NCBI GenBank assembly: GCA_950097015.1
Contig: CATNEN010000038.1
Location: forward strand, 17,980,001 to 18,044,000
Direction: 5' to 3'
DNA: 64,000 bases
Source of the DNA: Macrostomum hystrix
Lineage: Eukaryota > Animalia > Platyhelminthes
The notes below the pieces were generated by a model that ran no database searches, had not been told where the DNA came from, and saw only the letters and a list, made by a program, of their open reading frames with translations. Below are positions 1-35,044 of this stretch, in pieces. The translations under genes and the position numbers were made by a program. Within the stretch, counting starts at the first letter, position 1, and each line of letters starts with the position of its first letter.

Positions 1-1038
1 GCGATGCGTCGTCAGAGTCGACTACCTCGTCAATTTTTGCCTTCCCCATTGCGAGCAGCAGCTGTTTTAAGCTAGTCGGATCCTGTAGAAGCATTAATTT
101 TTTTTGTTTTATTGTTAGTTAAAATTTTCTTTTAATAGAAGGAATCCGAAAATACCTCGAAAACCGATTCATCCAAGAACTGCGACAGCCTGTCGAGAAT
201 GTCTGCACTGAAGCCGGTGCAACCGTGGGCAAGGCAAGCGCAGATGACCTTCCAGAGAATTGGCTTCAGTTTCATTTTCCACTCTTCGTTTTCCAATCTG
301 GAAAGGCAGATGTGCAGATCTTTCACGCGTGTTCATTTTGTACTGAGTCATTAGTTACTAGGCTTAGCAGCCAGTTCCCACTCTCTAAATAGTTAGCCAT
401 TGCCGCTGTATGGCCAAGCATAATCCTATCCAATTAGTTAATTTAGTTAATTAATTAGAGGTTGAGCTAAAGATTTCTAGTAGCTTTTGTCCTTTGGAAA
501 CCGTTGGTTCGTATTCCCATTGTTTTTTTCACCGCCCTTCTGGGCCACCCGCGGAATTTCTGTCAGTGAGTTCATTCCAGCAAATCGGAGAGTTCAAATG
601 AGCCCAGCCAATCGTATCGATGTTGTGACGTCGGCGTCTTCGCCGGACTTTATCGGAGTGTGCACAACGAACGAGAAATTCAGGACTCTCTTGGATAATA
701 GATTCCTTCTAGACTCAGGCATAAGAAATGAGACGAGACAAAACTTTAAAAAGTACAAAACTTATGATTAAATTATACCAGAACTGAAATTCATCTCACA
801 TGGGACCTCGCACGTGATCAATGAACCGATTCACACAGTTGTCTCCAGGAGAGTTCCTTCTGGGCCACTGTTTGTTCTCAGTCTTGTCGAACAGATCCCC
901 CATGGCTTGCATCAAAGCAATGACATCAGTTGCAGTCATGGCCTCGTGAGGAAAGTGCTTTCTGCAGTGATCTTGCACAGCATCGTCCGCATTTTCCGCA
1001 GTAGTTTGAAAATTTAGACTTCGAAAGTAGGCATCCAT
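1..1038 (-). CDS. 5' part (exons 1-3: 800-1038, 156-297, <1-82) of a third paralog of the helical-CC-DD-TIR-TIR gene; continues beyond the window's left edge
   Basis: Exon translations MDAYFRSLNFQT..RNSPG..RFIDHVRG, EEWKMKLKPILW..GFSADIL and DPTSLKQLLLA align with exons 1-3 of the copies at 11323 and 23371. GT/AG sites have the same phases. The C-terminal domains are not visible in this window. Confidence 0.85.
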
Positions 1039-1089
1039 TCTGCTGAAGACGGAGTTTTAAAAACAGTTGTATATATAAGCACCAATATC

Positions 1090-1264
1090 AGCCCTTTTAA
1101 GGCAGTGTACACTCTCCTAGAAGGTTAGCTTTCAAGGGCGTAAATTGCACAACAAGCCACTAAGCTTTCTTTTCACATCTGCGCCCCAAATAAATGTGGC
1201 GTCGCCGCGGAATCGAGCTCAGGGACATTGGTGTGAGAGACAAACGCGTCCTACCACTCAATCC
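1090..1264 (-). mobile_element. tRNA-derived SINE family A, 5' partial copy
   Basis: Reverse complement matches the head of the copies at 10145 and 50958 (..CCCTGAGCTCGATTCCGCGGCGA..CACATTTATTTGGGG). Confidence 0.75.
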
Positions 1265-1734
1265 CATTTTACTGGATTTCTAACCGATGACTCTACTGGG
1301 CTATGTGTAACTTGTGTGTATTCTAATGTCCACAAGAAAGGAAAATGACTGACGTAGGCTGTCGGCTTTGTGAGCGTAGAAATCACGGAACTCAAACTCT
1401 GGAATCTAAGTAGTTTTAATATATTTGGTACTGCTTGATTAACTGTCATTTAGGCGCAGAATGCTCATTCGACTATAAATACTCTTTATAGTGGAATATA
1501 AAATCATGAATCAGAAATAAATTAGATGGATTTTGTCTGCGACGATCGCAAAACAGTCGTCGCAAGACCATGTGTAAAGCATGTACATTGAAGGAGACAG
1601 AGATATCTACGATATAGTACTTTAAATTTTAGTGTGATTGAGAATATATGACGAATTTATGTATATCAATTATGTATAGTTTGATTAATTAGAATTTAGT
1701 CGATGGTATTACTCCTGAAGTATCAGCATTGAAA

Positions 1735-4700
1735 TTAAAGCAGCTCGCACGTCTTCGACCTCCCAGCAGCGCTATGAACCTTCGCCAGCTTCTCTCGCTT
1801 CTTTTCGCTCATCGGAGGTCCATGGTTCGAGATGCCACCATCATCGTCATCTGCCATTGAGTTTGTTGAGACATTGGTCGCGACTTCTGGCAAAAACTGC
1901 GTCAGTCTGGCATGGATCTCCTGGAACTTCTCTCCTCGCCACGTCAGCTGATCGTCCGCGTCCTTGTACATCTGGACGTAGATGAGCTGGGTGAGCGGCA
2001 TCGACATCGGACCCTCCGGAGGCCAGGCCATCTTCTCCAGCATCACTGGCACAATCGGCTTGCGGATGGCGTCAGCGAGACTCACCTCGCGCCTGCAGTT
2101 GGGCGAGGCGGCGTACTTGGGAGTGACGAAGGCCAGCAGAACGCTGCAGCCGCGAACGCCGCGGTCGATCTTCTCGTACAGCGAGTCGCCTCCGCCCATC
2201 TGGAAGATGTCCATCCAGCAGGTGAATCCCAGACTGCTGAGTCGCGAGTAGAGCGCCTTCACCTCTGTCTGCTTTGCCCACTGGTACGAGAGAAACACCT
2301 GACACGCTGCTTGAGGTGCAGCCGACTGTGCGGAGCTGTCACTTCCGCCGTCTTTGCCGGCCGACTTGTCGGTTCTGGCGTCCCCTTTCCTTTCCGGCAG
2401 CACGATGATCTCGTCAGCAATGGGCGGCTGCCACCAGTTTGCGTACTCCGCAGCCACCGAGTCATAGTCGGGCGCAACGGCCAACCGAATTTGAGCCAGC
2501 AGCTCTGAGAACTTGTCCGGCGGCCAGAACACTCCGCCGGCTGAGCCACCGGCCTTGCCACCACTCCGATCGAACATGCGGATGTACAGGTACTCTGTGA
2601 GCAGAGGACCCATGGCTCCCTCTGGAGGCCAGGACACTCGCTCCAGCTGCACAGGAATCAGGTGCTTGTTCAGCGACACCGACAAGTTCAGCTGCAATCG
2701 AGAAATCATGCATTTCAGCCAAATATGATTGTACTTTAGCACCTTTAGCACTCGTCATGACCGATCACTCACCTCTCGTCTGCAGTTGTCCGACTTTGAG
2801 TACTTCTCAGTCACGCACGCGATCACCACTTTTGCGGATCGAATTCCAGCATCGATGGCTGAGAACAGCTTGTCTCCGCCTCCCATCTGACCAATGTCCA
2901 TCCAGCAGCGATATCCGGCCTTCTCAAGGTGCTGCTTGAGCATCTTCACCTCCGCCTGATGCGCCCACTGGTAGCTGAGGAAGACGTTGCGAGGAGCCGT
3001 GAACTCGACCGGATCGTCCGATGCAGCCGACTCTGCAACCAAATGGGACGAATCATTTATTCAGACGACACCGCAACAGCAGCTCACGTGACACTCACCT
3101 GCGTTGAGAATGGACGCCTCGACTATGGCTGCTGCGTCGAGCCGATTCATCTCCTTGAGCTGCTGCAGCACTGCCTTGGACGCCTCTGCTGCTCTGTTGT
3201 TTGCGTAGAACTCAGCCAACAGACTCATGCACGGGTCTGGAGTCGTCGTCCATGCTCGAATGTCATCAGCTGTGAAGTTGAGCCTCTGAGCCAGCAGTCG
3301 CCAGTCAGTGTCGGACTCGGGATTCATCAGGCGCGAGACCTCGCGAGACCACGCGGGAGCCGCACTCAGAGTCTTCAGGATGCAGTTTAGGTGAAGAGCG
3401 ACTGCACTGGACTCGGAGTATGCTCAAAATGATGCAAATGACAGCTCACCTTCAGGTCGATCTCCTCCACCTTCTCGCCCAGCACTCCCACAGTCACATT
3501 CAGGTCGTCAACACGTCCTTCGGTGACCTCCACGCGTCCACGAACTTGACCGAGCTCGTCTCTGGTCTGATCCACGCGACCCGACACGTCGTCCACCTTG
3601 TGAGCGGTGTCGCTCAGGCCTCGCTCGAGTCCTCCGATCTTGCCGCTCTGCTCAGTGACCTGGCCTTCCAGACCGACCAGCGAGCGGTTCGCAATCACAT
3701 CGAGCAGGTGGTTGCAGGCGTCGAGCAGTGCGGGACTCGACTTCCACCGCTTGATGTCGGACTCTCGCTCGGCCAGCAGCTGCGGACTGTCAACTCCGAC
3801 GCGTCGCATCAGCGCGAGGCAGCCGGCGAGCTTGTCCGGAGCCGAGTCCAACGACAGGTGGTGGTTCACGATGTCACAGATGGCCGCCATTAGATGAGCA
3901 GTATCGAATTTGCACTTCTCGATGGTGTCGATTGCGTGAACAACAAGATTGATGTTGGATTTTGCGGTGGCTGTTAGAGGGTTCAGACAGTCATTCATGA
4001 CATGCTGTTGTGTTGCAGCAAGAGAGGCCAGTGCTGCCATGGACGGCACTTGGTGGTCTCCCTGCTTCTGCAGAATCTTCAGCAAGTAGTCTCGAAGGAA
4101 CTCTGGATGGTGTTTGCTGTTCAATTTGCAAGCATTGGTAATCAAATATGTAAGCTGACTATCGCTGTTTGGAACACCTTGAAATAAGTCAACCAAGTTC
4201 GGAATTTCGGCAGCCAAGTTATCCGGCATTTCTTCTTTTGAGCTGTTGTACAGATTGTCTGGAAAGATTAGCTCATAGACATGTAGGTTAACACTCGTGA
4301 TTCATAATAAAATGACGATGTGCAACTTACACAAAAGTCCCGCTGCTATTCCCGCATACAATTGTGGCTGTTTGTTTTTCGTTTTCTTGAAGGCTTCAAT
4401 TAGCTGCGGTAGGTGAGGAAGCGAAGGAAACACTGTTTCCGGGCTGTTTCCAAGGCACAAGCTGAGGCCCATTACGAGGCCCGTAGCGGAATCGGCCTTT
4501 GCGCTGCTTTGAAATTTATCGGCTGCCACAATGTACAAAGGAAGCAGCTCTTTGCTGACGTCAACTAGCTATGAAAAATTGGAAGGACGTGTGGGATCAG
4601 CATAAAATAAAGATAAGCATTTTAAGCAACTCATTTCCTACCTTTGCGGCCTGCTGGAATCCGGTAGTCAGACTAATTATAACAGAATGTGCAATTTGGC

Positions 4701-7700
4701 CTTCGATAGACATTGTGTCTTGCCCAGAATCGTCCACGGTTGCCACTTCACCAGCGAGACAGGCTTCAAGCAGGCTGTATAGTTGTTTCACTTTGCTGCA
4801 AATTACTTCCGGTGAGTTGCTTCTGAAAGTCCATTGATTTTTTGCAGCTGATCGATTACATTTTCCGTTTACTACTTTTAATGAAGCATTGCATGCATTA
4901 TACGAGTTTCACGGCTAGAGACATGAAAATACTGTCGTCTGAGATGCAGCAGAATATTTTTTGGACATTGTGCCGCTCTTAGGGTTTCTGTTTTACGAAT
5001 TTCCGAAAAACGAATGTTAGTGTGCAAGAACTATTACTGAACCTGACTGAATCTGCGAGGCGACAACACAAAATTGGCTGAGGATCTTCGGGCGGGGTGA
5101 TAGACCCGGAAGTCCCAAAAGGTTACAGATATCCTGGTTACAGAAAACTGAGACTCGTTTTTCATCTTCAAATTAGTTCTTAATCAGTAGAAAGATCATC
5201 TCAGATGTTTTTATTCAGACTTAATTGGCGATTCGGTTTTATTGATATTTTAGGAGATGCAGAAACGAAAATTATGTGGGTATTTGAAATACCCCCCAAA
5301 TGTCTTTCTACTTTTAAAGCCTTTAAAGTTTTCCGTGTTGGAGCCCCTATCACTTCTACACTGTACACTGGGTTTGATTATTGAAATGATAGTTATTTCG
5401 TACGTTATTAAAATTCTTACACAACGGTGCTGACGAAGTTCAATGGAATATTTAGATAAACAGAGCCTCGGTGCAAAGTCTCTAGAGTAATGATCGGTTG
5501 TTGAACGTATTCTGTCAGTGCGTCGAGAACTGCGGGCAGCTGGTCGATCATGTCGGACCAGTTGAACATGTCCGCTTGCCAGCCACTGACGAGAATAGTC
5601 AAACTGATGCTTTTCACAGCTCGGAGCATGATTCCGAGTAGCTTGAGCTGCATTGGTTTCTGCCTGAGCATAGTCTTGCCTGGCGATTGGCTGAAATGTT
5701 TTTGGTTTGCTAGACGCGAAAATTGGAAGCGAAACAGCTTGAGAAGATGCATCTTTTGTTTAAATCCAGTAGATTGTACATCCATATACTCACTAAATGC
5801 TCATAATCAGCCTGTTAAATAGATCGCTAGAGTTGGCATCAATTGAAGGATCCGCAGACAAGCGCTTCGCTTCCTCATCTGCCAGCAGTTTGGCTAGGTA
5901 AGTGTCCATGAATAGCAACAGGGCCGGACGGAACGTCTGCAGTGTGTTGATTCAATCCGTACTTCAGTTGATGCTTTGTGAGCAGATTTTTACGGTAACG
6001 TTAGTATAATAATTTCCATTGACAAAAAGAACGACTTTATAGTGTGTGTTTTGTCAGCACCAATCCACAAGCTGCGGTTCTGGTGAATCCTTCATCTCTC
6101 ATGCCGTAACAATCAATTATTAAAATGCACTAAAGCCTGACAACAAAGTATATTTCAAGTATATTTAAAGGAATCCTGAAACTGAGAAAATTTACCGTGG
6201 TCTATCAAATTAGAGCGAATAACGACTGTCACATTTTTTGGAAAACACTTATTATGCGAGTATTGCCTTAATCTCACAACTGGGACGTTGATGCGCTAAC
6301 AGTTTATAGGAGCTCGATTTATATTCAACTGTAGCTAGTAGGGGGTGAGTAGCAGAGCGGTTAACGTGTTTGTCCTTTCGCACAAGGTCCCTGAGCTCGA
6401 TTCCGCGGCGAGGTCACATTCATTTGGGGGTGCAGCCGCTGAGAGAAGTCTAGAGGCTTGTCGTGCAATTGGTGCCATTAAAGGCCAACCCACAAGGTAC
6501 AGTGAAGTGTACGCTGCCTGACGATGAGAAATTCAAGGCAGATGTACACACCTGTATGAGTGTCTGCTTGCGCTCAGCTGTCTGAGTGCGTGTGTGTGAG
6601 GTACAGCTTTTGGAAAAACATTATCCAATGCCTGAGCTGCTCAAAATAGCTATTTTTACATATGCGTCTTGCTTTATCATCCAATAATATACACGCGGAC
6701 TTTCCATCCAATCAACGCGAACTAAGAGCATGCTATTTAATCAGACGCTGAGCGCAAGAGTAAAGTGCATCCTTTTTTCCCATCCAGACTAGCTATCAGG
6801 CTTCTATGACAACCCTGATATAGCTTTACTCTTCCTGTCTAACAGGACTGTTGAATTCTAAACTCTGAGAATTTGAGAGAACTCAAATCTGCAGCATTCG
6901 AGTAACCGCTCCTACTTGACCGGCAGACCTCCAGGCTCCAGTCTTCGGAGACTCACTTAAGATAAGTCGGACAATACTCTTGTTGTCTAATTAATATCTT
7001 TGCGTGATCCAACATCCATGCGTATTTGACAACATTGCTGATTGCGAAATATAACGTCTAAGTTGAAGGGTACAACATCAAGGTAAACAGTCGAACCGGC
7101 CTCCTGTCTCCTTACTCAATAATGGGAGAGATAACTAGACCCTTAGTCCTAGACCTAGACCTAGACCTAGACCTAGTTCTAGTACTATTTTTAATTATTT
7201 CATGTGCCCAGGAGTCAGCGGAATAGCCTCCTCGCTGGCTGTGGTTCTAGTGTCACCAAATGATGTGCCTTTGTCCGCAGCCCTCCTGCAATTATTTTTA
7301 ATATATAATATTATTGCTCATAGCTCGTATTTTAGGAGCTTCTTACTTTTAACTGAGATCGGAAGTTTGAATCCCAGTCGAATGATGACAACTTGCTTTG
7401 TCATTTTAATGATGACAATAGGCCCTATCAAATTATATTCCACTTTTTTAACTCAAATGGTCCGGATTCGGTTGATTCAAAAGCTTACCTCCGAGTCCTT
7501 CTGAATCAACTTCTGATTCTGGCTGTCGAGAAACATCGATCTAAAGTACTGGTCGAACTCCTCAGCAGACACCGACAGCAGGTCCAGGTAGACAGGCATG
7601 CATTTGCACAGCTCTTGAACGCTGAGCACCAATTTGGGTAAAAATCTGCGGAAAATCTGTTCGCGAATGTCTCTGAGGAATTTCTGACAAGCCGGCAGCT

Positions 7701-10700
7701 TTTCGCCATTTTCCTCAATGAACGGCTTCAGCAGAAACTGAATGGTGTCTCGGTTAGTCAAAGCTTCATCGATGCTTGGAATATTCTACGTGGAAAATGG
7801 ATTTAATTAACAGGCAATCAGTTTAGTGAGTTTAGTGAGAGGCATTTTTTAATGCTCAATCGAGACAAGGGTTAACGGCGGAGTGGCATCGCGTCAAACG
7901 GTTCAAAAGGGTCCCCGAGCTCGAATCCTGCCTGCCTGACGATTAAGAAATTCAGACAGAATGTATGTCAGACAGACATACCCGTGTGTATGTGTGATTA
8001 AAAGGTCAGTTGATTGCGTGGACTTCCTTGCTGCTGTGGGTCAGCTGAGGGGCGAGTGGGTCAGCGGCTAACGTCGCTGCCTCGCACTCCAAATGACGCT
8101 AGTTCGATTCACCCTTCAAGTCACGATTAATTTCGGTACTTGTTGGGGGGGGTTTGGACAGTAGCGACCGGCGGAGGTGCACCATATTTCGTGCAATCAA
8201 AGCTTGAAATAATAGCTTCGCTCCTACCTTCTGTGTGCCTGTTCTGCGTTGTATGAGTTATGTGCGTTGGCGCTGGGGCGTTAGACCTTGCGGGGGGTGG
8301 CTGGAGGGCGGGTGTACACCGCCGCGCGCTCCCTGGAATTCCGTCAGCGCGATTGGATAAGTGTACACTCATCACCCGGCCCCCCCTGAGGACTGATTTC
8401 TTATCAGCCTTCCGCCCCGGCCTGGTCTGCTCTGTGCGTGTGGGGCTGGGGTGGGGGACACTGCTGCCTATTCTGGGTGCCTCCTGCCCTCCCCGGCTGG
8501 TCTGTGCTGTTGTGTGTGGTGCCTGCTCAGGGGAGGCGGCGCGATGGGCGCTAAAGCGCCTAGTTCGCCGGTCTGGGGGCGTGCCGCTCCGTCGCTTGTG
8601 CGACAAGTGCCCCGGGCCCCCTGCAGATAGATAGATAGAGAGTGGGTCAGCTGTCCCCCGAAATGATGCAATAAAGACCTCAGCCCTGTTCAAATCTTAA
8701 ATTTTTTGCTCGATTAAAAACCAAGGATCGCGTTTATTTTACGCGTCAAATAACGCACCGGAAGGCCCATCTTGGTTCGAATAGCGCATTCGTGCAGCCG
8801 CACAAGCAAGTATTTTCCTCGATCAAGCAGCCGCTCATTGTCAGTATTGCTAGACAAAAGGCGCAGGCAGATTCTATTCGCATCGTTCACTAAACCGGTG
8901 AAATCCACGGCTTTTAAATCGCTGGAATATGAAAATAACAAGTTTAATCAGTCTGCAGTGTTTGCGGTGTTTGTGGCCGCCAGTCTGTTGTATCAGGCCG
9001 GTTTGGTTGTCTCGGCCTTGGCCTCGCCCTCTCACCCTTCTCCCCCGTCCCTGCTCTGTGTGCCCTGAGCCGCCACCTGATTGGTGGCTGGGCGCGGGAG
9101 TTGTCTGTAAATCCTTACCCCAGCCCTGCGTAGCTTTGCCCGTCCACCCGGCCAGCCCGTACAACTCTACCCCTCCCTGCGCGCTGTTGGCTTGACTTTG
9201 GTAGTTTTTGCACCGCCTTCCCTGTCTGCCCCCACCCCCAGATAGGTGTCCTATTTTTTCATTGTCTGCCCATGCCGGGGCACCTCTCGTGCGCTCCTGC
9301 GATAGCGTTTGACCTTTACGATTCGAGCCGCAAAGACGGCTGTTACCGCGAGGACTCAATTTATTTCATGAAATCAAATAAATACACCGAACTCGTCAGA
9401 GAAGCCACCTGCGTCATCTTCCGTTCCGACTGGTAAGCGCTGCATTCGTGTTTTTCTTTTCGGAGTGCCAGGTCCGTACTGTACAATCTTACTTAGCAGT
9501 ACTGCGTCCTGACGCATAGCTCAGTTTACTTAATGCTACTGTGGGCGGGTATCCCGAACTGACCACAGTCACTACACTTACTAGGAGCTTTAATTCAAAC
9601 TTACTCAACACTTACTCAACTGCCGCCCCAAGCCGGATCAGCATCATGCCCAGAACGTCTGCCGTCTTCTTGGGTAGCGCTTTTCCATGTTGACATTCAA
9701 CCAGATCGTCGAATGTCCTTATCAGAGATTGCATGAACGATTGGTCACTCGAGTACATCTGAAATGTGTTTAATGGGAAAAGTCGTTTAAAACATAGTAA
9801 AGTTTTGTGCTCCAGCAATTAGCTAAGCAGCCTACGTGAATGATGGAACTGCTCAGCGGTCGGTCTACGTAGTAAGCGAGCTTTCGAACCAGCGCTGCCA
9901 TGACATTCTCTCTGAACTGCGCAGTCGCTTCATTTGTGGCGTCACAGGTAGCCAAATTGCTCAAGTAGAGCGCTTTCACTGAGTCTGGTATGTGGTCAAA
10001 AAATATCTTCTCGCTGAAATTCAATGTTTAAAAATTGCTTTATGTGTTCGCAAGGGACTCTGCATGGCAAATAAAACGTAGGTTAAACGACTGAATAAGT
10101 TTAGGCTATGCCCAGAAAAGTTGCAGTTAGCTTGGCCTCAGTTTGGGGGGTGGGTGGCAGAGTGGTCTAACGCGTTTGCCTCTCGCATCAAGGTCCCTGA
10201 GCTCGATATCGCGGCGAGGCCAAATTTATTTGGGGGGCACAGCCGCGGAGAGAAGGCTTGGGGGCTTGTCGTGCAATTTACGCCCTGAGGGCCAACCTCC
10301 AAGGCACAGTGAAGTGTACGCTGCCTGACGATGAGAAAGTCAGGGCAGATGTAAACACCTGTGTGAGCGTATGCCTGCGTACGGTATCTGTGTGCGTGTG
10401 TGCTCAGGAGTCAGCGAAATGGGCAGAATTGCCTCTTCGCTGGCTGCGGGTCTACTGACACTAAATGATGTGCCATTGCCCGAAGCCCTCCAGTAAATGT
10501 TACAATTATTGGTCTCAATTCGTTTTAGGTACGATAATAATTTCTGCAAAGAGTGATGCTGATTCCGATTTATAATTCAGAGTTCGAACCTGAAATTAGA
10601 CAGCTTGAATGTCACAGTCAGGTCGTTAAGCCGAGATACCGCGTAAGCGTGATCTTTCTGATCAGCCGCCTCGGCCGGTGCCTCGATGCGCAAGTCTTGG

Positions 10701-11323: not shown

Positions 11324-11519
11324 GCAAGCTGAAGTAAGAGTACGGGATGGCAGTTTTGGAATTTCATTTTTCGATTTTTAGGTTTTTAGCAGCATTTTAA
11401 ACTAGAAACGTAATAGGTAAAAACGTAGTCGGAAAATACCCATGCAGTTCAAGGCATACGAGTAATACTAGACAATACCCAGTCCTGTCCTATACATAAG
11501 ACACACAAGAGGTCCTGCT

Positions 11520-14701: not shown

Positions 14702-17700
14702 TCACAGCAGCTCGCACGTCTTCGACCGCCCAGCAGCGCTATGAACTCTGGCCAGCTTCTCTCGCTTCTTCTCACTCAGAGGGGGTCGCTGGTTCGAACC
14801 GCCACCGGAACCAGTCGGGTTGCCAGCAGTGATGGTCGTGGAGACCTCTTTGATGCTTACGCTTTCTTTAACAGCCGCTTCGGGCACAAACTGCGTCAGT
14901 CTGGCATGGATCTCCTGGAACTTCTCTCCTCGCCACGTCAGCTGATCGTCCGCGTCCTTGTACATCTGGACGTAGATGAGCTGGGTGAGCGGCATCGACA
15001 TCGGACCCTCCGGAGGCCAGGCCATCTTCTCCAGCATCACTGGCACAATCGGCTTGCGGATGGCGTCAGCGAGACTCACCTCGCGCCTGCAGTTGGGCGA
15101 GGCGGCGTACTTGGGAGTGACGAAGGCCAGCAGAACGCTGCAGCCGCGAACGCCGCGGTCGATCTTCTCGTACAGCGAGTCGCCTCCGCCCATCTGGAAG
15201 ATGTCCATCCAGCAGGTGAATCCCAGACTGCTGAGTCGCGAGTAGAGCGCCTTCACCTCTGTCTGCTTTGCCCACTGGTACGAGAGAAACACCTGACACG
15301 CTGCTTGAGGTGCAGCCGACTGTGCGGAGCTGTCACTTCCGCCGTCTTTGCCGGCCGACTTGTCGGTTCTGGCGTCCCCCTTCCTTTCCGGCAGCACGAT
15401 GATCTCGTCAGCAATGGGCGGCTGCCACCAGTTTGCGTACTCCGCAGCCACCGAGTCATAGTCGGGCGCAACGGCCAACCGAATTTGAGCCAGCAGCTCT
15501 GAGAACTTGTCCGGCGGCCAGAACACTCCGCCGGCTGAGCCACCGGCCTTGCCACCACTCCGATCGAACATGCGGATGTACAGGTACTCTGTGAGCAGAG
15601 GACCCATGGCTCCCTCTGGAGGCCAGGACACTCGCTCCAGCTGCACAGGAATCAGGTGCTTGTTCAGCGACACCGACAAGTTCAGCTGCAATCGAGAAAT
15701 CATGCATTTCAGCCAAATATGATTGTACTTTAGCACCTTTAGCACTCGTCATGACCGATCACTCACCTCTCGTCTGCAGTTGTCCGACTTTGAGTACTTC
15801 TCAGTCACGCACGCGATCACCACTTTTGCGGATCGAATTCCAGCATCGATGGCTGAGAACAGCTTGTCTCCGCCTCCCATCTGACCAATGTCCATCCAGC
15901 AGCGATATCCGGCCTTCTCAAGGTGCTGCTTGAGCATCTTCACCTCCGCCTGATGCGCCCACTGGTAGCTGAGGAAGACGTTGCGAGGAGCCGTGAACTC
16001 GACCGGATCGTCCGATGCAGCCGACTCTGCAACCAAATGGGACGAATCATTTATTCAGACGACACCGCAACAGCAGCTCACGTGACACTCACCTGCGTTG
16101 AGAATGGACGCCTCGACTATGGCTGCTGCGTCGAGCCGATTCATCTCCTTGAGCTGCTGCAGCACTGCCTTGGACGCCTCTGCTGCTCTGTTGTTTGCGT
16201 AGAACTCAGCCAACAGACTCATGCACGGGTCCGGAGTCGTCGTCCATGCTCGAATGTCATCAGCTGTGAAGTTGAGCCTCTGAGCCAGCAGTCGCCAGTC
16301 AGTGTCGGACTCCGGATTCATCAGGCGCGAGACCTCGCGAGACCACGCGGGAGCCGCACTCAGAGTCTTCAGGATGCAGTTTAGGTGAAGAGCGACTGCA
16401 CTGGACTCGGAGTATGCTCAAAATGATGCAAATGACAGCTCACCTTCAGGTCGATCTCCTCCACCTTCTCGCCCAGCACTCCCACAGTCACATTCAGGTC
16501 GTCAACACGTCCTTCGGTGACCTCCACGCGTCCACGAACTTGACCGAGCTCGTCTCTGGTCTGATCCACGCGACCCGACACGTCGTCCACCTTGTGAGCG
16601 GTGTCGCTCAGGCCTCGCTCGAGTCCTCCGATCTTGCCGCTCTGCTCAGTGACCTGGCCTTCCAGACCGACCAGCGAGCGGTTCGCAATCACATCGAGCA
16701 GGTGGTTGCAGGCGTCGAGCAGTGCGGGACTCGACTTCCACCGCTTGATGTCGGACTCTCGCTCGGCCAGCAGCTGCGGACTGTCAACTCCGACGCGTCG
16801 CATCAGCGCGAGGCAGCCGGCGAGCTTGTCCGGAGCCGAGTCCAACGACAGGTGGTGGTTCACGATGTCACAGATGGCCGCCATTAGCCTCGCCGCGCCG
16901 AAGCTGCCCTTGTCCATTGTATTAATCACTAGAGCAACGAGGTCGATGTTGGCCTTTGCAGTTTGTATAAGCTGATCTAAAACCCCGGTCATTGTCTGCG
17001 GCTGATTCTCCGCTAGGGCGGCGAGCCCTGTTAGTGCCATAGCGGCGAACTGTCCCTGCAGGATGCTCAGAAGATAGTCTCGCATCTGCTCAGCACAATG
17101 TCTGCTGTTGTTTTTGCAGACTATATTGACGACGCTGACTAGTTGTACCTGTACGTGGCTTGCTTCTCGGGCAATCTCAATCAACTGCGCTATCTGGGTG
17201 GCCAGCTCATCTGGTACATTAGCATTGGATGCCTGCTGCAAGCTCTCTGCGAATTTTGGTGTAGAAATCTTGTATGTTTAATTTTTGCTGTAAGTGTATT
17301 TGTACATCTATTCTGCTAATTAATTTCATGTTTGAGTATTCGGATTTTATAATTGAGAATACTCACGGAGCAAGCCAGCGAGCATGGGAGTGAACATCTG
17401 ATCATTAGCGGACTTCCGCTCTTCTAGGTACTGCAACAGGAGCGGCAGGTGGCGCAGAAACTGGAACACAGTGTCGGGGCTCATGCCAAGGCAGCTGGTC
17501 AGGCCGACCATGATGGAGCTCATGCCTGATTCCGGATTTTCAGTTGTCTTTCTACACATTGTGATGTACAATGGGTACAACACTTTGTTGATGGGTAGCA
17601 TCTAGAAAAAAGTTTTTAACGGCCAATGAGTATGTTCAAACACTACTTTGAAGTCTAATGTTTTAGCAAAATATTTATGATCTACTCTAGCCGCACCGTT

Positions 17701-20700
17701 TGCACATTTGCGGCAGACATGAGATTGCTGAGCAGGTTAATGACCACGAGTCCCTCAGTAGAAATCATGTCTGAACCGCTCATCAAGGTCACCACGAGGT
17801 CCTGCTTGAGGCACGCCTCTGTGATTCTACGAATGCTCTCCAGACTGCTGCAGACTGTCTGTGGAGCATCTTTGCTGCAAGTTTTAAATAATGAGAATTG
17901 AGAGTTGGTAATATCACTAGTTGCTTGGCGCTAAGAACATGCTTCCCTGACCCTTGCACGAATTGCACTGTAGAGAATTTGAAATTGTATATAGAAGTAA
18001 CTGTTGTGAATTGACTGACTGAATGCTAATTTACGCATACTGCCACTATGAGTAGTGCAGTGAGGAAGCTAGTAGTTTCTAGAACCTTCTGTAGCCAGAA
18101 TATTCTAGAACCTTCTATAGTCCGTGTTTTCTAGAACTTTCGATTTAACATATCAGCTACCTATAAATATACGGACACAAAGCTATCACAAAAAGGATAA
18201 CTTCTCAATTTGGAATCTGCCAACAAATCCGTTGTTCCCTTCGTTCACTACATAACAGTAACAAGTGCAGTTAATATTTTAATACCTGTAGCATGAATAG
18301 TGAAGGCATGAGAACTGTGAGAACATTGTGAACATTAAGAATCGGATTAGTCTACTATTATAATTAAGCAGAATAGCAGCACAATACGAGGATGATAAAA
18401 TTAATTCTTAGGTGACACTTGAAAATATTTTAATGAGAACTTAATGAATTTTATTTTTATGTGCAATGAAAGGCAGATGATATGATACCAGCTAGGCTCA
18501 AAAACCCAAGATAACGTAACGTTTAAAGCTACAAACATTCGCTGCTCACATCATGAAGCTGATAAAGTCGAGCGGTATAACTGCAAAACCAATGCCGTAG
18601 TGAACGCTCTCAATGGTGGTTATCGGATTCGCTAAGAATTCCTCCAGCATGTCCAGATTTTCCTGAAACTTATCGCGAAGAATCGGCCAGTTAAAGGTCT
18701 CCTTATCGATGCCACGAATGGCTCCAAGTAGGCAGAGACTTCGTTTGGCGACCATCTTGCGCATTGTTTCGAAAAGCTTTAGCTGAGTTTCCTTGCTGTG
18801 TACCATCTTCTTGCCGGGCGACTTGCTAAAATATTAAGCGTTTTCGTTAACAGTTCGAAGCAAATAGTTCCGGGGCAAACGAAAGTTTAATGCGCACTTG
18901 AATTCACGAGTACCAAGTTCATAAGAGATATAACGGTGAGATGTTCTCAAGCATGAGTTCCACCGAAATGAGACGTGATTAGAGATACTGGAGAGCCACA
19001 CAAAGACGTTCTCAATAATTAGGATCACAATGTGACGCTTTTTAAGAACTTGTGTCAACGCAATGAGACGTGCAGCTTAGTTATTAGTGTGTCACGGTGT
19101 GAAATTCTCACGAATTAGAGCGCAACAATGCGACATTCTCACTAATTTGAGCGCCACAATGAGACATTCTTAAGAGCTTCAGTACTACGAGTACAACGAG
19201 CATGGCTTCCGGAATTAAAGCATCACAATAGGACTTTTTTATTTTTGCAACGCAATGATCGAAATGTGCGCTTAGTTATTAGTATGTCACGGTGAGACAT
19301 TTTCACGAATTAGAGCGCAGCAATGAGACATCTCAAGAGTTTGAGTGCTACAACGAGAATTTTCTCAGGAATTAAAGCGCAACAATGTGACGCTATCAAG
19401 AGTTAGCTTCACAGTGCGACAGAATACACACCAGGAATAAAATGATCTTTATTAGATTGATAGTTACGCAATGAATTCCATCAGTTATTTTCCTAAATAT
19501 TGAGGGGTAGATCGAATATACACTTACAATAGATTTTCGACCATGTCTTCAAAGACGGACGCCAGTTTGCGAACTGGGCCGTAAACCAGAGGGTCGCCCT
19601 GATTTGTCTCCGGCACAGAGCTATCCAACTTGATCAGAGTTTCCGCACACTCGTCAATGAATAGTAAAAATGCCGATTGGAATTTCTGAAAGTATTTTCA
19701 GTCTTATTTAACGCTCGTGTTTATATTTGGGTGTGTCAATGTTGACGGTGGCCTTTCTACTCGTATATTTTACTTTCAAAAAATGCTGGAACAAAGGCTA
19801 CTTATTGTGGCGTGCCTCGCTTTCATCCTCACTTCATCCTCAACTTCATCCTCGTCGTCAGTATAGATAATATAGCATTCGTCTTCTAAACCAGTGCCAA
19901 TTATCGGGATCAAAGCTAGCTGTCACCGAAGGCATGTTTTCAGATAAATCAATGCAAAATATGGAACTGTTTGTGCCGGACTCCAGTCATGGAAGCAGTG
20001 AAAACATCTTGTACTAAGGGTTTAAACTAAAAAAAAAATTTCTAAGGGTTGGATCAACTGTGCAGTTCAATGGATCAATGCTTACTAAACTGTACATTGC
20101 ACGACAACAGGCTGATGCGTACATCTGGAGAGAGCTGAGGCAGAAACGGAAAGAAATTTTTATGGGGTGGCGTCGGCGTGAAGTCCTTGCCGAAGGAGCA
20201 GCTACCGCAAACTATGCGTATGACTGCTGTGAGATTGAGAAGAAATAGTCTATGGCCTGCAGGGCCTCCCGCAAGCTACGGCAGTATAATGAAAACAAGC
20301 CCGCAATTCAAGCGTTATTGACATGTTTGTATGCGTATGGTCAGATGTCAAAGGTTTTCCATCAGAAATATATGAGTTTTGGCCATAGATATTACAACAG
20401 TCATTGATGAAAAACGTTAGACAATGCCCTAAACTGGCTTCTATTTTTTAAATAGAAATGGATCCACTCCCTAAGCTGCTTCGTAGTCTGTAGGTCAAAT
20501 AAAAAGACCTGGAAGTACTTTAACTTGCCTAGCACATCCTAGACAAATTATCTACCAGCTTTTCTTGGGCAAAAGGCTTACCGCTGCGCTCAACTGTATG
20601 ACCTTCCGCTTGTTGCTTTCAAAGTACATGCGGCGAATGCTTTCAACGAATTGGGCTGTGGAGACTGGCAGTTGCTTAAGGTACAGTGGCATGCACTTAG

Positions 20701-23371
20701 CCATGTCCTCAGCTGTGACAACAGTTCCAGGTAGGAGCTTCTGGAACAGCTCATAGCGAGTCTCCTTGTACAGCTTGTCTTCTGGCTCCAAGTTGCCGCT
20801 GTCGTTCTTCTTGGACTTTCTCATGATGGCATCAATGCTGATCTGCCCATTGACTAGATCATCCAGGCATGGTGTGTCCTTGTATTTCAAGAGGCGGTTT
20901 AAAAATTACATAAGCAGTCACTAAGGATGTGGTTTCTCCTTGACAAGGATGTGGTGCCTCATTGACAAGGATGTGGTGCCTCATTGACAAGGATGTGGTG
21001 TCTCATTGACAAGGATGTGGTGCCTCATTGACAAGGATGTGGTGCCTCATTGACAAGGATGTGGTGCCTCATTGACAAGGATGTGGTGTCTCATTGACAA
21101 GGATGTGGTGCCTCATTGACAAGGATGTGGTGTCTCATTGACAAGGATGTGGTGTCTTATTGACAAGGATGTGGTGCCTCATTGACAAGGATGTGGTGTC
21201 TCATTGACAAGGATGTGGTGCCTCATTGACAAGGATGTGGTGCCTCATTGACAAGGATGTGGTGCCTCATTGACAAGGATGTGGTGTCTCATTGACAAGG
21301 ATGTGGTGTCTCATTGAGAAGGATGTGGTGTCTCACTGACAAGGATTCAGTGTCTCATAGACAAGAATGTGATATATTCCAAACAATGCCGTTTTAAAGG
21401 CCCAGCGATTTCAGCATTTAAGTCACAGTCACGATAAGACTGTGAGTCAGTTGCTGTCGCTAACACCTGCACTCACCGCTAGAGTGTACTTCTTATTGAT
21501 GGCCAGTTCCGTCAGGCGACGCATCATGAAGCAAGCCGATTTCAGTGTCAGCTTGCTGCTCATCAGCTTCAAGCAGCTCCGAAAGGCGTCATTAAATAAG
21601 TACTTGAAGTCGACATCTTTCATGTCACTGTCAATGGAAAGTTTCTAATTTACGCATGTGAATATCTCCTCGGTTGCTTTATTAAGTTGTCCAAAAATGT
21701 TCACGACACTCACCACATTGCCGAACTGAAATTCGTCACAACCCCATCCAGACAGGTCACAGCTTCCTGAGACAGCTCTGAGCTGGGCGCGGCCTCCAGT
21801 GCTCCAACCAGTCGGCGCATGAATTGCTCATCGTTTGAGTAGTACTGAAATTGCGGATAAAGGTTCACACTGTCATCGAACGTGGCAAACTATGCAGACA
21901 AAAGTGCAAACAAGTTCAACAGTTTCTGGGGCAACAATCGTACTCACTGTACTACTGTACTCACGTGAACAAGTGACGATTTCATTGGAGCTGATTGGAA
22001 ACTCTCCAACTTCCTGCGAAGGCACCCGAGGGCGAATGACCGGAGGAAGAGAATCTCATCGGATTTCGAGTCGCAGTGACTGACAAAGTCCAGGTACAGG
22101 GCTTGGATCTCTGCCGTGTTCTTGAACAAAACCTGGGCGCTGTAAGAAGTGTTTTTAACCTCAAAAGTTGGATTGCGAATAATGAAAATGCTGCTTGAGC
22201 ACTGATTGCAACATAGTTACTAACCTGAAGCTGTCCAACAATGAAGTGACCGTCTGGCTGTTGATTTGAGAGGCCACGAAGCGGCGCTCGTCCGGTTCGC
22301 CTTCAATGCGGGTCTGACGAATGGTCAGCAGCAGCTGCTTGGCGAACTGCTCTTCCTACGGGGAATTATGAGTCCGAATTTTGAGCTCTACGGTTTAACT
22401 CACCGCGTGTAAAGTCCAGTAAAGTCTTCGGTAAAATGAGTACTGCAATTTTCTGCAATGATATTTCACTTTGGTCACTCACATCGAACTTCAGACGGCT
22501 AAACGACTGTCGCAGATCGATGAAGACATCGGTGGTAAAGCCACTGGCGCCGTGAGCGAAGCAGGAGCAATACGCCGACCAGACTGCGGGTCGCAGAGCT
22601 TCAAGCCAGTCCTCGTGATCACTCCTGCCGATTTTTGAGACGTTGTTAATACAAAATAATATTTTATAAACTTGTAGCCATGTGGTCACAGCGTCGAACT
22701 CACAAATTTAAGGTCGCGGGTTCGATTCTCGACCATACTGGAAAAATTCGCGTCCTTTTGCGAGACACTTAACTGTACATTGGTTCAGTTCAACCAGCTG
22801 TTAAATGGGTTCCAGCATTAGCTGGGATAGTTAAGGGTGGGTGTGGTATCCTCACCAGTCCATGGACTGAACAGCTGTACGCAGCCTTCAGAAGCGCCGC
22901 AAAATAGCTGCGGCTGTGCTGTCGGCTGCACATTTGGCCCACGTGGGGCAGATGTAATCAATTATTCCTATTATTTTTGCCATTAAAGACTAAAGGTCAC
23001 GGAACACCAAATCGTAAATTCCAAGAGCTTGGATCTTTCAAAAGTCTGCGTGTCATTCTCTCAAGGTTTACGCTTGTACATCTCAGGTTCTCATGGTCGG
23101 CATTTTGACATCCCAAAATCAGTCCCTAGACTCACAAAGCGTCTCGCATGTGCACAATGGTCCTGAGCACACAGTAATATCCGGGTGAACTCCTCTTGGG
23201 CCAGAATGACGGCCCCTTGGCCATGCAGCTACCAAGGGCTCCGAGCACATTCTCAATGTCCCGCTGAGTCAGACTGTTAGTCGGGAATTGCTGATTGTAG
23301 TAGTCTAGTAGGTCGTTGTCACTGTTTTCTGCCTGCGTTTGCAGGTTTAGACTTGCGAAATGGGCGTCCAT
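14702..23371 (-). CDS. Copy 2 of the helical-CC-DD-TIR-TIR-CaaX gene. 15 exons, approx. 23136-23371, 22482-22625, 22225-22355, 21955-22139, 21714-21844, 21477-21627, 20582-20878, 19528-19685, 18550-18825, 17697-17874, 17367-17601, 16444-17246, 16093-16366, 15767-16026, 14702-15685
   Basis: Same exon order and phases as copy 1. The C-terminal exons are near-identical (offset 12994). N-terminal exons are remotely homologous, e.g. DMKDVDFKYLFNDA vs DLKAVDFTGLVNDA and YYSNDEQFM vs MYSSDQSFM. Confidence 0.88.
18002..18257 (+). mobile_element. Solo LTR (256 bp) in an intron of TIR gene copy 2
   Basis: Termini TGTTGTG...CATAACA, 5-bp TSD GTAAC (17997-18001 and 18258-18262), internal TATAAAT at 18162. 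Confidence 0.75.
18077..18168 (+). promoter_or_regulatory. Three heat-shock-element arrays plus TATA box within the solo LTR
   Basis: TTCtaGAAccTTC (18077-18089), GAAtaTTCtaGAAccTTC (18098-18115), TTCtaGAActTTC (18129-18141), then TATAAAT at 18162. Confidence 0.6.
18940..19420. repeat. Degenerate ~31-bp tandem repeat (GAGACATTCTCACGAATTAGAGCGCAACAAT-like), intronic
   Basis: Recurring GAGAC.TTCTCA.GAATTAGAGC.C.ACAAT words. Confidence 0.7.
20922..21368. repeat. Minisatellite, 22-bp unit TGACAAGGATGTGGTGYCTCAT, intronic
   Basis: About 20 near-perfect tandem units. Confidence 0.97.
22672..22960 (+). mobile_element. tRNA-derived SINE family C with CORE/V-like central motif
   Basis: tRNA-like head ending GGTTCGATTCTC, followed by GTCCTTTTGCGAGACACTTAAC and CAGCTGTTAAATGGGTTCC, which resemble conserved central domains of metazoan SINE superfamilies. 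Confidence 0.55.
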
Positions 23372-34811: not shown

Positions 34812-34919
34812 GACTCCGAGGCCGCTTGAGGATCATTGGCTTTCTGAAAGTCCACTTTGAATGTCACCCTGGCTTAATATTCTGGCGTGAAACCACAGCT
34901 CACAAAAGTTTGAGAAAAA

Positions 34920-34975: not shown

Positions 34976-35044
34976 AGAACAGATGTTGCTAAAGGCACAG
35001 AGATACTCTTCTAGATATTCTTAAACTGGTAAGAAGTGCAAAAG

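What the first reader, a model, noticed from the sequence alone, without database searches (positions are those of the whole stretch)
1..23371. Tandem array of candidate intracellular immune receptors: variable ~950-aa helical N-terminus on a constant coiled-coil/death/TIR-TIR/CaaX module
Seen in sequence: at least three head-to-tail paralogs with shared exon phases. By eye the N-terminal exons share only about a quarter to a third of residues, yet stay open and spliceable. The C-terminal module is invariant between the two complete copies. Established: death and TIR domains are innate-immune signalling modules, and SARM1 couples an ARM sensor to a TIR effector. Inference: this is a diversifying sensor/constant effector family, NLR- or SARM1-like in logic but with no NACHT, LRR, SAM or transmembrane segment. 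It is the best candidate for an undescribed system in this window.
Basis: partly seen in the sequence, partly recalled or inferred. Interest (0 to 1): 0.88.

Follow-up and report, generated by a model that had tools for sequence, protein, structure and literature searches.

The report
Gene-converted flatworm ARM-Death-TIR-TIR gene array
Five neighbouring flatworm genes encode a probably lipid-anchored immune-type signalling protein of an invertebrate family that was catalogued in 2017 but never studied functionally; their front halves are old and different, and their back halves are kept identical by DNA copying between the genes.

Summary
On the minus strand lie tandem 15-exon genes, two complete in the window and five in the array, each about 1,480 aa. 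Each encodes a helical N-terminus of about 840 aa, an 11-heptad coiled coil, a Death domain, two TIR domains and a polybasic tail ending in CELL. N-termini of the three types (A, B, C) are about 35% identical. A 2.0-kb tract, introns included, is 99-100% identical in all five copies.

This is not an undescribed system. It matches "ecTIR-DC family 6" (Gerdol et al. 2017, as cited in PMC6836662), which occurs in molluscs, annelids, nemerteans, echinoderms, hemichordates and amphioxus. It is also not a diversifying receptor repertoire. The genome has only three N-terminal types. They are ancient: synonymous sites are saturated, and type B has a Macrostomum lignano orthologue. The "constant" module is constant because of gene conversion and unequal crossover.

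The SARM1-like logic holds at fold level. Other details may be new: both TIRs keep the catalytic Glu position of NADase TIRs, the CaaX Cys is invariant in 45 bilaterian homologues, the coiled coil models as a trimer, and the host phylum lacks TLRs. Function is untested, and no RNA data could be obtained. Other first-reader notes in this scan had already flagged the tract, the tail and the mosaic SNPs.

The parts
14702..23371 (-). Gene B (type B), complete, 15 exons, 1,476 aa plus stop. Exons: 23371-23136, 22624-22483, 22355-22225, 22139-21965, 21844-21714, 21627-21477, 20878-20582, 19685-19528, 18825-18550, 17874-17697, 17601-17367, 17246-16444, 16366-16093, 16026-15767, 15685-14702.
   Evidence: Spliced alignment to M. 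lignano P0022: all introns GT-AG, no internal stop. tblastn identity is 54-77% per N-terminal exon.
1735..11323 (-). Gene A (type A), complete, 15 exons, 1,481 aa plus stop. Exons: 11323-11088, 11006-10856, 10735-10590, 10013-9836, 9758-9616, 8921-8759, 7785-7489, 5936-5794, 5690-5421, 4822-4642, 4568-4331, 4258-3450, 3372-3099, 3032-2773, 2691-1735.
   Evidence: Spliced alignment to the gene B model: same intron phases, intact ORF.
1..1038 (-). 5' end of gene C (type C). Exon 1 is 1038-800, exon 2 is 297-156, and exon 3 runs from 82 to the window edge. The remaining 12 exons lie in the flank (L004).
   Evidence: The full model spans window 1038 to -5943 and gives 1,483 aa.
1894..3893 (-). Homogenised (gene-converted) tract of gene A. 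It covers the last ~70 aa of the solenoid, the coiled coil, Death, TIR1 and TIR2, plus introns 12-14.
   Evidence: BLASTN gives 99.75% over 2,010 bp against gene B. The five-copy alignment has about 20 variable sites in ~2,000 bp and abrupt edges. GC3 is 0.745 here against 0.56-0.64 in the N-terminal exons.
14888..16887 (-). Homogenised tract of gene B.
3456..3683 (-). Coiled coil of gene A: 11 heptads with V/L/I at the a position. The gene B equivalent is 16450-16677.
   Evidence: Heptad register. The family profile hits trimeric Lpp-56 at E 2.8e-6. A three-copy model scores ipSAE 0.81 against a best control of 0.26, with in-register contacts.
3115..3336 (-). Death domain of gene A. The gene B equivalent is 16109-16330.
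   Evidence: Pfam PF00531, E 3.7e-8. The nearest solved relatives are the p75NTR and NRADD death domains.
2569..2985 (-). TIR1 of gene A, split by intron 14 (2692-2772). The conserved Glu of the 'NCRRE' motif is the last codon of exon 14. The gene B equivalent is 15563-15979.
   Evidence: Pfam TIR_2, E 1.6e-19. The family profile aligns TIR1 to SARM1 TIR residues 561-663. The Glu is invariant in 45 homologues.
1954..2298 (-). TIR2 of gene A. The gene B equivalent is 14948-15292.
   Evidence: Pfam TIR_2, E 2.1e-24. Nearest structures to the model are RPS4, AbTir (TMt 0.76), SPARTA and the SARM1 TIR. The Glu aligns with the Glu of the WCxxE-type motif of the Cat1 TIR.
1738..1815 (-). Polybasic stretch plus CaaX box (CELL) at the C-terminus of gene A. 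The gene B equivalent is 14705-14782.
   Evidence: Read from the sequence. This stretch lies outside the converted tract but is 88% identical at DNA level. C-x-[ILV]-[LI] with upstream K/R is present in every full-length homologue checked. The Cys is invariant in 45 sequences.
11522..13615 (.). Array of about 70 copies of a 30-bp tandem repeat, in the intergenic spacer between genes B and A.
   Evidence: TRF, score 3103. The homologous spacer follows gene C in the flank.

Best explanation
These genes are the Macrostomum members of an already catalogued invertebrate family, ecTIR-DC family 6, which some papers call 'MyD88-like with ARM fold'.

Protein. Each protein has six parts in order: an ARM/HEAT-type alpha-solenoid, an 11-heptad coiled coil, a p75NTR-like Death domain, two TIR_2-type TIR domains, a disordered tail, and a polybasic CaaX end.

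Evolution (shown). Three old paralogue types (A, B, C) sit in one tandem array. A 2-kb 3' cassette (coiled coil to TIR2) is kept identical among them by gene conversion. One unequal crossover inside that cassette, between C and B, turned B-A-C into B-A-C-A2-C2.

Mechanism (inferred). The protein is geranylgeranylated and sits on the inner face of a membrane. It trimerises through the coiled coil. Its solenoid holds the Death and TIR output in check, as the ARM domain does in SARM1. On binding a ligand or partner that differs between A, B and C, the solenoid releases the TIR pair and the Death domain to assemble. The TIRs then either consume NAD+ and make a nucleotide signal or act as a scaffold. 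Because the host phylum has no Toll-like receptors, the protein most likely acts on its own rather than as a TLR adaptor.
For: Architecture and intact genes.

Family:
- 226 homologues at E<=1e-20, all from non-vertebrate bilaterians and mostly 'uncharacterized protein'.
- They include Aplysia LOC101850562, described in PMC9334734.
- The same domain composition is named ecTIR-DC family 6 in PMC6836662.

Concerted evolution:
- The tract is 99-100% identical including introns.
- Module dS is 0.008-0.025, against saturated dS in the N-termini.
- Against M. lignano, type B is 65.7% identical in the N-terminus, while A and C are only 34-36%. All three modules are equally ~89% identical.
- The N-terminal tree joins B with M. 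lignano (SH-aLRT 100). The module tree joins all five local copies (93).
- Module SNPs group by position (B+A versus C+A2+C2), not by N-terminal type. A-A2 module dS (0.026) is five times the dS of their N-termini (0.005).

Unequal crossover:
- C carries B's tail and about 600 bp of B's 3' flank at 97-100% identity.
- C2 carries the A-type tail.

Fold:
- Residues 1-500 of the amphioxus homologue are all helical, with pLDDT about 90.
- The best Foldseek hits are full-length SARM1/TIR-1, then PP2A-A, CAND1 and beta-catenin.
- A profile HMM of deuterostome N-termini matches the Macrostomum N-termini at E 2e-9 to 5e-6.

TIR type:
- The nearest solved relatives are SARM1, AbTir, PdTIR, Cat1, RPS4 and SPARTA.
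- Both Glu residues are invariant.

Trimer: ipSAE 0.81 against a best control of 0.26. The mark was reached by 21 of 30 solved homo-pairs and 0 of 23 single chains. The runs agree in at least 72% of contacts, and partner pLDDT is at least 65. The test is not calibrated for three copies.

No TLRs in Platyhelminthes, including M. lignano: PMC8609888.
Against: - No transcript evidence for this genome.
- Prenylation, trimerisation, NADase activity and autoinhibition are all inferred from sequence or models.
- Foldseek E-values for enzymatic and scaffold TIRs are close, and MAL and TLR15 also appear.
- TM-scores to SARM1 are low (0.1-0.2), because only the domain order and folds match, not their packing.
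- The fold model is of an amphioxus homologue that lacks the extra ~330 N-terminal residues of the spiralian proteins.
- I could not read Gerdol et al. 2017 itself. The family name rests on how two open papers cite it.
- The A/A2 and C/C2 pairs (about 99.5% identical) could in principle be an assembly duplication of haplotypes. The B-type tail on C argues for a real structural difference.
Confidence: 0.8

Rival explanations
1. A diversifying intracellular receptor repertoire in the NLR sense. On this reading the N-termini are under positive, pathogen-driven selection, and selection on the protein holds the effector half constant.
For: - N-termini evolve faster than the module between orthologues: 34% versus 11% amino-acid divergence between B and M. 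lignano.
- In other species, same-species paralogues (several encoded on the same contig) always differ far more in the N-terminus than in the C-terminus.
Against: - The whole genome holds only three types.
- dS between types is saturated while dN is 0.65-0.72, so there is no excess of replacement changes.
- The recent duplicates give 4 non-synonymous versus 3 synonymous changes (A-A2) and 2 versus 3 (C-C2), for dN/dS of 0.4 and 0.2.
- Module identity extends to introns and synonymous sites. Protein-level selection cannot produce that.
Confidence: 0.1
2. A MyD88-type adaptor that couples Toll-like or IL-1-type receptors to Death-domain kinases, as its 'MyD88-like' database names imply.
For: - The Death-TIR order is the same as in MyD88.
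- Homologues are named 'MyD88-like protein L1' (sea urchin) and 'MyD88-like' (Aplysia).
- The lucinid clam homologue is more highly expressed in the gills, as are TLRs (PMC6836662).
Against: - TLRs are absent from Platyhelminthes, including M. lignano (PMC8609888).
- The TIRs score as TIR_2. They fall below the gathering cut-off of the TLR/MyD88-type model PF01582: 18.5 and 14.9 bits against 21.3.
- The BB-loop region reads WMDIGQMGGGD, not the Box 2 RDxxPG that PMC7075850 gives for MyD88-like TIRs.
- The nearest solved Death domains are p75NTR and NRADD; no MyD88 or IRAK death domain is among the 39 listed matches.
Confidence: 0.07
3. The identical cassette is an artefact or a trivial result of very recent whole-gene duplication, not of gene conversion.
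For: A/A2 and C/C2 are indeed recent duplicates with dS about 0.005.
Against: - Types A, B and C are about 35% identical up to a mid-exon point, then 100% identical.
- The same step occurs in five copies inside a 35-Mb contig.
- The trees of the two halves disagree, with support of 100 and 93.
Confidence: 0.02

Closest known systems
ecTIR-DC family 6 (Gerdol et al. 2017, Dev Comp Immunol 70:145; as described in PMC6836662 and PMC5549309)
   Same: - Long ARM-like N-terminus, central Death domain, two C-terminal TIR domains.
- Cytosolic, restricted to invertebrates, often in several copies per genome.
- Direct sequence homology over the C-terminal ~600 aa (46-64% between phyla; 40-48% for M. lignano P0022) and over the proximal ~470 aa of the N-terminus.
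   Different: - This is a flatworm member, from a phylum without TLRs.
- The cassette is fully homogenised between paralogues.
- In the open papers I could read, I found no mention of the CaaX end, the coiled coil, or the NADase-type Glu for this family.
SARM1 / C. elegans TIR-1
   Same: - An ARM solenoid at the N-terminus, an oligomerisation unit in the middle, and a TIR with the catalytic-position Glu at the C-terminus.
- Best Foldseek match of the full-length family model.
- The TIR1 profile aligns to the SARM1 TIR.
   Different: - No SAM domains. A trimeric-looking coiled coil plus a Death domain takes their place.
- Two TIRs instead of one.
- A CaaX end instead of a mitochondrial targeting sequence.
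- No detectable sequence homology in the solenoid.
MyD88
   Same: A Death domain followed by a TIR. Some databases and papers call family members 'MyD88-like'.
   Different: - An extra N-terminus of about 900 aa and a second TIR.
- TIR_2-type TIRs without Box 2 RDxxPG.
- A p75NTR-like rather than MyD88-like Death domain.
- No TLR partner in this phylum.
Concerted evolution of part of a gene in tandem families (general model reviewed by Nei & Rooney 2005, cited in PMC4346834)
   Same: Sharply bounded conversion tract, higher GC in the tract, SNP mosaics that follow position rather than orthology, and unequal crossover changing copy number.
   Different: Only the effector half is homogenised, and the boundary lies inside an exon. 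Old sensor halves therefore share one young effector cassette.

Membership tests
ecTIR-DC family 6 | Long N-terminal region with ARM-like repeats | tested here: met
   The homologue model is all-helical over residues 1-500, with Foldseek hits to SARM1 ARM, PP2A-A, CAND1 and beta-catenin. The Macrostomum N-termini match the family N-terminal HMM at E 2e-9 to 5e-6. The Atlas gives weak HEAT-protein leads only.
ecTIR-DC family 6 | Central Death domain | tested here: met
   PF00531, E 3.7e-8, above the gathering cut-off.
ecTIR-DC family 6 | Two C-terminal TIR domains | tested here: met
   Two PF13676 matches, E 1.6e-19 and 2.1e-24.
ecTIR-DC family 6 | Cytosolic: no signal peptide or transmembrane segment | tested here: met
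   The highest Kyte-Doolittle 19-residue mean is 1.5-1.7, inside solenoid helices, and there is no N-terminal hydrophobic stretch. This is a crude test.
ecTIR-DC family 6 | Formal definition and phylogeny in the original paper (Gerdol et al. 2017) | not testable with these tools
   The paper is not in the held library. The assignment rests on PMC6836662's description and on homology to bivalve and gastropod proteins of that architecture.
MyD88 | Death domain plus a single TLR-type TIR with Box 2 (RDxxPG) | tested here: not met
   There are two TIRs. PF01582 scores 18.5 and 14.9 bits, below the cut-off of 21.3. The BB-loop reads WMDIGQMGGGD. The Box 2 definition comes from PMC7075850.
SARM1 | Tandem SAM domains between ARM and TIR | tested here: not met
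   No SAM family appears in any Pfam scan of the window exons or of full-length homologues.
SARM1 | TIR with a catalytic Glu (E642 position) and NAD+ hydrolase activity | tested here: inconclusive
   A Glu at the WCxxE-type position is invariant in both TIRs. In TIR2 it aligns with the motif Glu of Cat1. The SARM1 alignment spans that region, but the residue-level view was not printed. Enzyme activity is not testable here.
NLR (NACHT/NB-ARC receptors) | Central NACHT or NB-ARC nucleotide-binding domain | tested here: not met
   There is no such Pfam hit, and the region is an alpha-solenoid.
CaaX-prenylated proteins | C-terminal Cys-aliphatic-aliphatic-X, with X = L directing geranylgeranylation | tested here: inconclusive
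   The motif CELL is present, preceded by K/R-rich sequence. The first 'aliphatic' position is Glu here and N, T, V, I or S in homologues. The Cys is invariant in 45 sequences. The modification itself is not testable.

The most novel reading that the evidence does not exclude
ecTIR-DC6 proteins would be a second animal class of ARM-regulated, NAD+-consuming TIR machines alongside SARM1, with three distinguishing features:
- They are lipid-anchored by a universally conserved CaaX end.
- They are trimerised by a coiled coil.
- They carry a Death domain.

They would act without Toll-like receptors. Gene conversion would keep the coiled-coil/Death/TIR cassette identical between paralogues, so that sensors with different solenoids can co-assemble into one signalling complex.
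Probability: 0.2. Interest if true: 0.75.

Novelty: new member of a known kind. Interest (0 to 1): 0.42.

Why it matters
The family is widespread in invertebrates, from molluscs to amphioxus, and often multi-copy. I found no functional study of it in the held library. It is usually filed under "MyD88-like", which the TIR type, the Death-domain type and its presence in a TLR-free phylum all argue against.

Macrostomum is a laboratory flatworm genus. From my own knowledge, not checked here, RNAi and transgenesis work in M. lignano. With three sensor types on one identical effector cassette, it offers a compact system for three tests:
- Are these proteins SARM1-like NAD+ hydrolases?
- Are they prenylated?
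- What do the solenoids sense?

The mid-exon conversion boundary is also a clean textbook case of partial-gene concerted evolution.

Tried and rejected
Tools that gave nothing:
There is no RNA evidence.
I could not fetch the M. lignano locus to see whether its paralogues share a species-specific cassette.
- The search for homologous proteins with the N-terminus of P0022 returned only near-identical M. lignano proteins.
- The search for homologous proteins with a five-phylum alignment returned only the query's own Tubulanus cluster. The word index does not reach N-terminal relatives.
- The protein-atlas search gave only weak HEAT-protein leads (scores 0.90-0.93, fewer than 170 shared features) and no structure search.
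- phmmer of TIR2 against the PDB did not extend the alignments to AbTir or PdTIR as far as the Glu. Only the Cat1 alignment did.
- Paper searches found no functional study of this architecture and no mention of a prenylated TIR-Death protein.

Readings rejected:
- NLR-like hypervariable repertoire: only three old types.
- MyD88 orthology.
- Assembly artefact for the A/B/C tract.

Joined models. Joined spliced proteins were not sent to any search, fold or complex tool. Those tools received single exons by window reference or database proteins.
Full report
WHAT IS THERE. The window is a eukaryotic (animal) sequence. Earlier notes of this scan call the genome a Macrostomum-type flatworm. That fits my finding that the closest database protein is from Macrostomum lignano. 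The window is contig C38:17980001-18044000 of a 220-Mb assembly. All genes of the finding are on the minus strand.

Pfam on the open segments gives a Death domain (window 3064-3423, E 3.7e-8) and two TIR_2 domains (2758-3060, E 1.6e-19; within 1738-2754, E 2.1e-24). The same three hits occur about 13 kb further on. The reading frame ends in ...KTCELL followed by a stop.

GENE MODELS. No spliced aligner was on hand, so I wrote a protein-to-genome dynamic-programming aligner in the sandbox. I ran it first with the M. lignano protein P0022 (PAA93690.1, 1,579 aa) on gene B. I then ran the gene B model on the other copies.

All five genes give intact 15-exon ORFs of 1,473-1,483 aa. All introns are GT-AG, and the intron phases are the same in every copy (2,0,2,0,2,0,0,2,2,0,1,0,1,0).

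Joined models were used only inside scripts.

SIZE OF THE FAMILY IN THIS GENOME. A six-frame search of the whole genome with the TIR2 exon finds five near-identical copies, all in one array at C38:17.955-18.004 Mb. It also finds one distant Death-TIR gene at 30.08 Mb. Searches with the N-terminal exon 7 of types A and B find the same five places and nothing else.

There are therefore five N-termini for five cassettes, and the N-termini fall into three types. The order on the minus strand is B-A-C-A2-C2. A2 and C2 are recent copies of A and C: dS is about 0.005 in the N-terminal part.

THE STEP IN IDENTITY. Between types, amino-acid identity is about 35% in every 50-residue window up to alignment column 850. 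It is then 100% up to about column 1400.

At DNA level the tract 1884-3893 is 99.75% identical to 14878-16887 over 2,010 bp. In a five-copy alignment it is 96-100% identical in every 100-bp window. This includes introns 12-14, and identity drops to 40-60% within a few bases on either side.

The 5' edge lies inside exon 12. That exon therefore physically joins type-specific solenoid sequence to the shared coiled coil in one ORF.

WHY THE CASSETTE IS CONSTANT. Synonymous divergence between types is saturated in the N-terminal part (pS about 0.75), with dN 0.65-0.72. In the cassette dS is 0.008-0.025. Selection on the protein cannot erase synonymous and intronic differences, so the identity must come from DNA-level homogenisation.

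The M. lignano protein provides the time scale:

| Compared with M. lignano P0022 | N-terminus | Cassette |
|---|---|---|
| Type B | 65.7% | 88.9% |
| Types A and C | 34-36% | 88.9-89.3% |

The three types therefore split before the two species did. Yet their cassettes are identical within this genome and equally distant from M. lignano's.

Trees say the same. The N-terminal tree joins B with M. lignano (SH-aLRT 100, quick IQ-TREE; the careful search did not finish). The cassette tree joins all five local copies (SH-aLRT 93) with near-zero branches.

Conversion appears to be ongoing:
- The ~20 variable sites in the tract mostly group B+A against C+A2+C2. That grouping follows position, not N-terminal type.
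- A and A2 differ five times more in the cassette (dS 0.026) than in their N-termini (0.005).
- The cassette is GC-richer: GC3 is 0.745 against 0.56-0.64, and its introns are 0.42-0.50 GC against 0.22-0.45 for other short introns (window profile). This fits GC-biased gene conversion but does not prove it.

HOW THREE GENES BECAME FIVE. Gene C carries the same C-terminal tail variant and about 600 bp of 3' flank as gene B, at 97-100% identity. C2 carries the A-type tail. The spacer after C is homologous to the B-A spacer.

One unequal crossover between the cassette of C and the cassette of B on a misaligned chromatid gives exactly B-A-C(with B tail)-A2-C2. The repeat unit would be about 19 kb. 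This is an inference from the mosaic. Long reads would be needed to exclude an assembly effect for the A/A2 and C/C2 pairs.

WHAT FAMILY IT IS. An exhaustive HMMER search with exon 12 found full-length proteins of the same architecture in M. lignano, the annelid Dimorphilus, the nemertean Tubulanus and the abalone Haliotis.

A search with the C-terminal 600 aa of the abalone protein returned 226 proteins at E<=1e-20. They come from gastropods, bivalves, annelids, a nemertean, sea urchins, starfish, a hemichordate and amphioxus. None are from vertebrates or arthropods. Almost all are named "uncharacterized protein", and one urchin entry is "MyD88-like protein L1".

Two open papers describe this architecture:
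[quoted passage not shown] TIR domains". [quoted passage not shown] 2017.
- PMC9334734 lists Aplysia LOC101850562, which is among my hits as P0073, as a MyD88-like protein with an Armadillo-type fold.

The system is therefore catalogued, though I found no functional study. I could not read Gerdol et al. 2017 itself.

THE N-TERMINUS. It has no significant Pfam match.

A profile of deuterostome N-termini (about 490 aa) matches residues ~330-800 of spiralian N-termini. For the three Macrostomum types the E-values are 2e-9 to 5e-6. The solenoid is therefore an old, homologous domain, and spiralians carry an extra ~330 aa in front of it.

An AlphaFold2 model of the amphioxus member P0114, built with a 45-sequence alignment, has mean pLDDT 77 and about 90 over residues 1-500. 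Those residues form about 30 stacked helices. Its best Foldseek matches in the PDB are full-length human SARM1 and C. elegans TIR-1 (E 2e-5 to 5e-4). Next come PP2A-A, CAND1, beta-catenin and importins. TM-scores to SARM1 are low. The match is in domain order and folds, not in packing.

Across species, same-species paralogues (several encoded on the same contig) always differ more in the N-terminus (23-85% identity) than in the cassette (64-97%). The N-terminus is therefore the fast half family-wide. Pairs such as Dimorphilus P0128/P0129 (35% versus 90%) hint that cassette homogenisation may occur elsewhere too. I could not test that without their DNA.

THE CASSETTE. A profile of five phyla against PDB sequences gives the following:
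- Death domain: p75NTR (E 7e-7) and NRADD.
- Coiled coil: the trimeric lipoprotein Lpp-56 (E 3e-6), reovirus sigma-1 and the P22 tail needle.
- TIR1: the SARM1 TIR (E 2e-4).
- TIR2: AbTir and BtpA.

The coiled coil is 11 regular heptads with V/L/I at position a. Three copies of the 148-aa piece encoded by window 3450-3893 are modelled as a parallel, in-register bundle. The ipSAE is 0.81, against 0.26 for the best of three controls. The mark was reached by 21 of 30 solved homo-pairs and 0 of 23 single chains. The runs agree in at least 72% of contacts, and partner pLDDT is at least 65. The test was calibrated on two copies, not three, and coiled coils may pass from memory.

A model of the window's own exon 15 has pLDDT 80-94 in the TIR2 core. 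Its nearest structures are RPS4, AbTir (TMt 0.76, rmsd 3.3), SPARTA, the SARM1 TIR and BtpA. Scaffold TIRs such as MAL and TLR15 are not far behind.

Both TIRs carry a Glu in an N-C-x-R-E motif that is invariant in 45 sequences from all phyla. In TIR2 it aligns with the Glu of the WCxxE-type motif of the Cat1 TIR. That this position is the catalytic Glu of NADase TIRs (SARM1 E642 and the plant TIRs) is from my own knowledge of that literature. I did not see the residue-level SARM1 alignment.

THE TAIL. The last ~25 residues lie outside the converted tract but are conserved (88% DNA identity). They end in K/R-rich sequence plus C-E-L-L.

Every full-length homologue I inspected ends in C-x-[ILV]-[LI] after KKS-like residues, and the Cys is invariant in the 45-sequence alignment. 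A terminal Leu predicts geranylgeranylation (general knowledge of CaaX rules). I found no paper noting this for a TIR-Death protein.

MECHANISM, WITH STATUS.
- Shown: the architecture, family membership by homology, three old types, the homogenised cassette, and the mosaic consistent with unequal crossover.
- Supported by models only: the ARM/HEAT solenoid, the trimeric coiled coil, and NADase-class TIR folds.
- Inferred: membrane anchoring by prenylation; autoinhibition of the TIR pair by the solenoid as in SARM1; type-specific ligands or partners; NAD+ cleavage or TIR/Death scaffolding as output.

Platyhelminthes, including M. lignano, lack TLRs (PMC8609888). In addition, the TIRs are not of the TLR/MyD88 type (Box 2 criteria in PMC7075850). 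A role as a TLR adaptor is therefore unlikely in this animal.

One further idea, that conversion is favoured because identical cassettes let A, B and C co-assemble, is speculation.

VERDICT. These genes are new members of a known, functionally uncharacterised family. They show a clean case of partial-gene concerted evolution and some family-wide features (CaaX end, coiled coil, conserved Glu in both TIRs) that deserve a bench test.

Other first-reader notes on this window and its flank had already flagged the 2-kb tract, the CaaX tail and the mosaic SNPs. My tests agree with them.

LIMITS.
- The N-terminal tree is a quick tree.
- The fold of the first ~330 residues of the flatworm proteins was not modelled, because full-length proteins exceed the size limit and joined models may not be submitted.

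Noticed in passing
L005:5038-6585 (G000:C38:30080038-30081585, minus strand): A 516-aa open frame encodes a Death-like region and a single TIR, 51% identical to TIR2 of the array. It ends in a CaaX-like CDIL. This is a second, different Death-TIR protein with a predicted prenylation end. Its upstream part may belong to a ROC/COR-type gene, like the Aplysia 'MyD88-like with ROCO domain'.
   Followed up: partly
window 11522-13615 and 20923-21371: There is a 70-copy array of a 30-bp tandem repeat in the B-A spacer. There is also a 20-copy array of a 22-bp repeat inside intron 6 of gene B. The 30-bp array recurs after gene C in the flank.
   Followed up: partly
window 30199-30603, 33352-33756, 36244-36648 (+): Three ORFs of exactly 134 aa are spaced about 3 kb apart, which suggests a tandemly repeated unit. 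The first has no Pfam match.
   Followed up: no
window 27095-28126 (-): An ORF has a Pif1 helicase 2B domain (E 3e-19). It may be a Helitron or Pif1-like remnant next to the array.
   Followed up: no
window 55169-57100 (-), 57723-58547 (-), 59758-60546 (-): There is a Vav-like gene (CH, RhoGEF, C1, SH2 in one 643-aa ORF), followed by two C-type lectin ORFs. A rhodopsin-type GPCR fragment (28429-29106) and a TMEM26 homologue (49862-50767) lie between them and the array.
   Followed up: no
proteins P0128/P0129 (Dimorphilus), P0053/P0073 (Aplysia), P0077/P0093/P0095 (Ruditapes): Same-species paralogues in other phyla also show N-termini at 35-53% identity with cassettes at 86-93%. Cassette homogenisation may therefore be a recurrent feature of the family, not only of this flatworm.
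   Followed up: partly
window 42000-48000 and 34000-36000: GC skew is strong and sustained: +0.14 to +0.16 over 6 kb, and -0.24 over 2 kb. This is unexplained.
   Followed up: no
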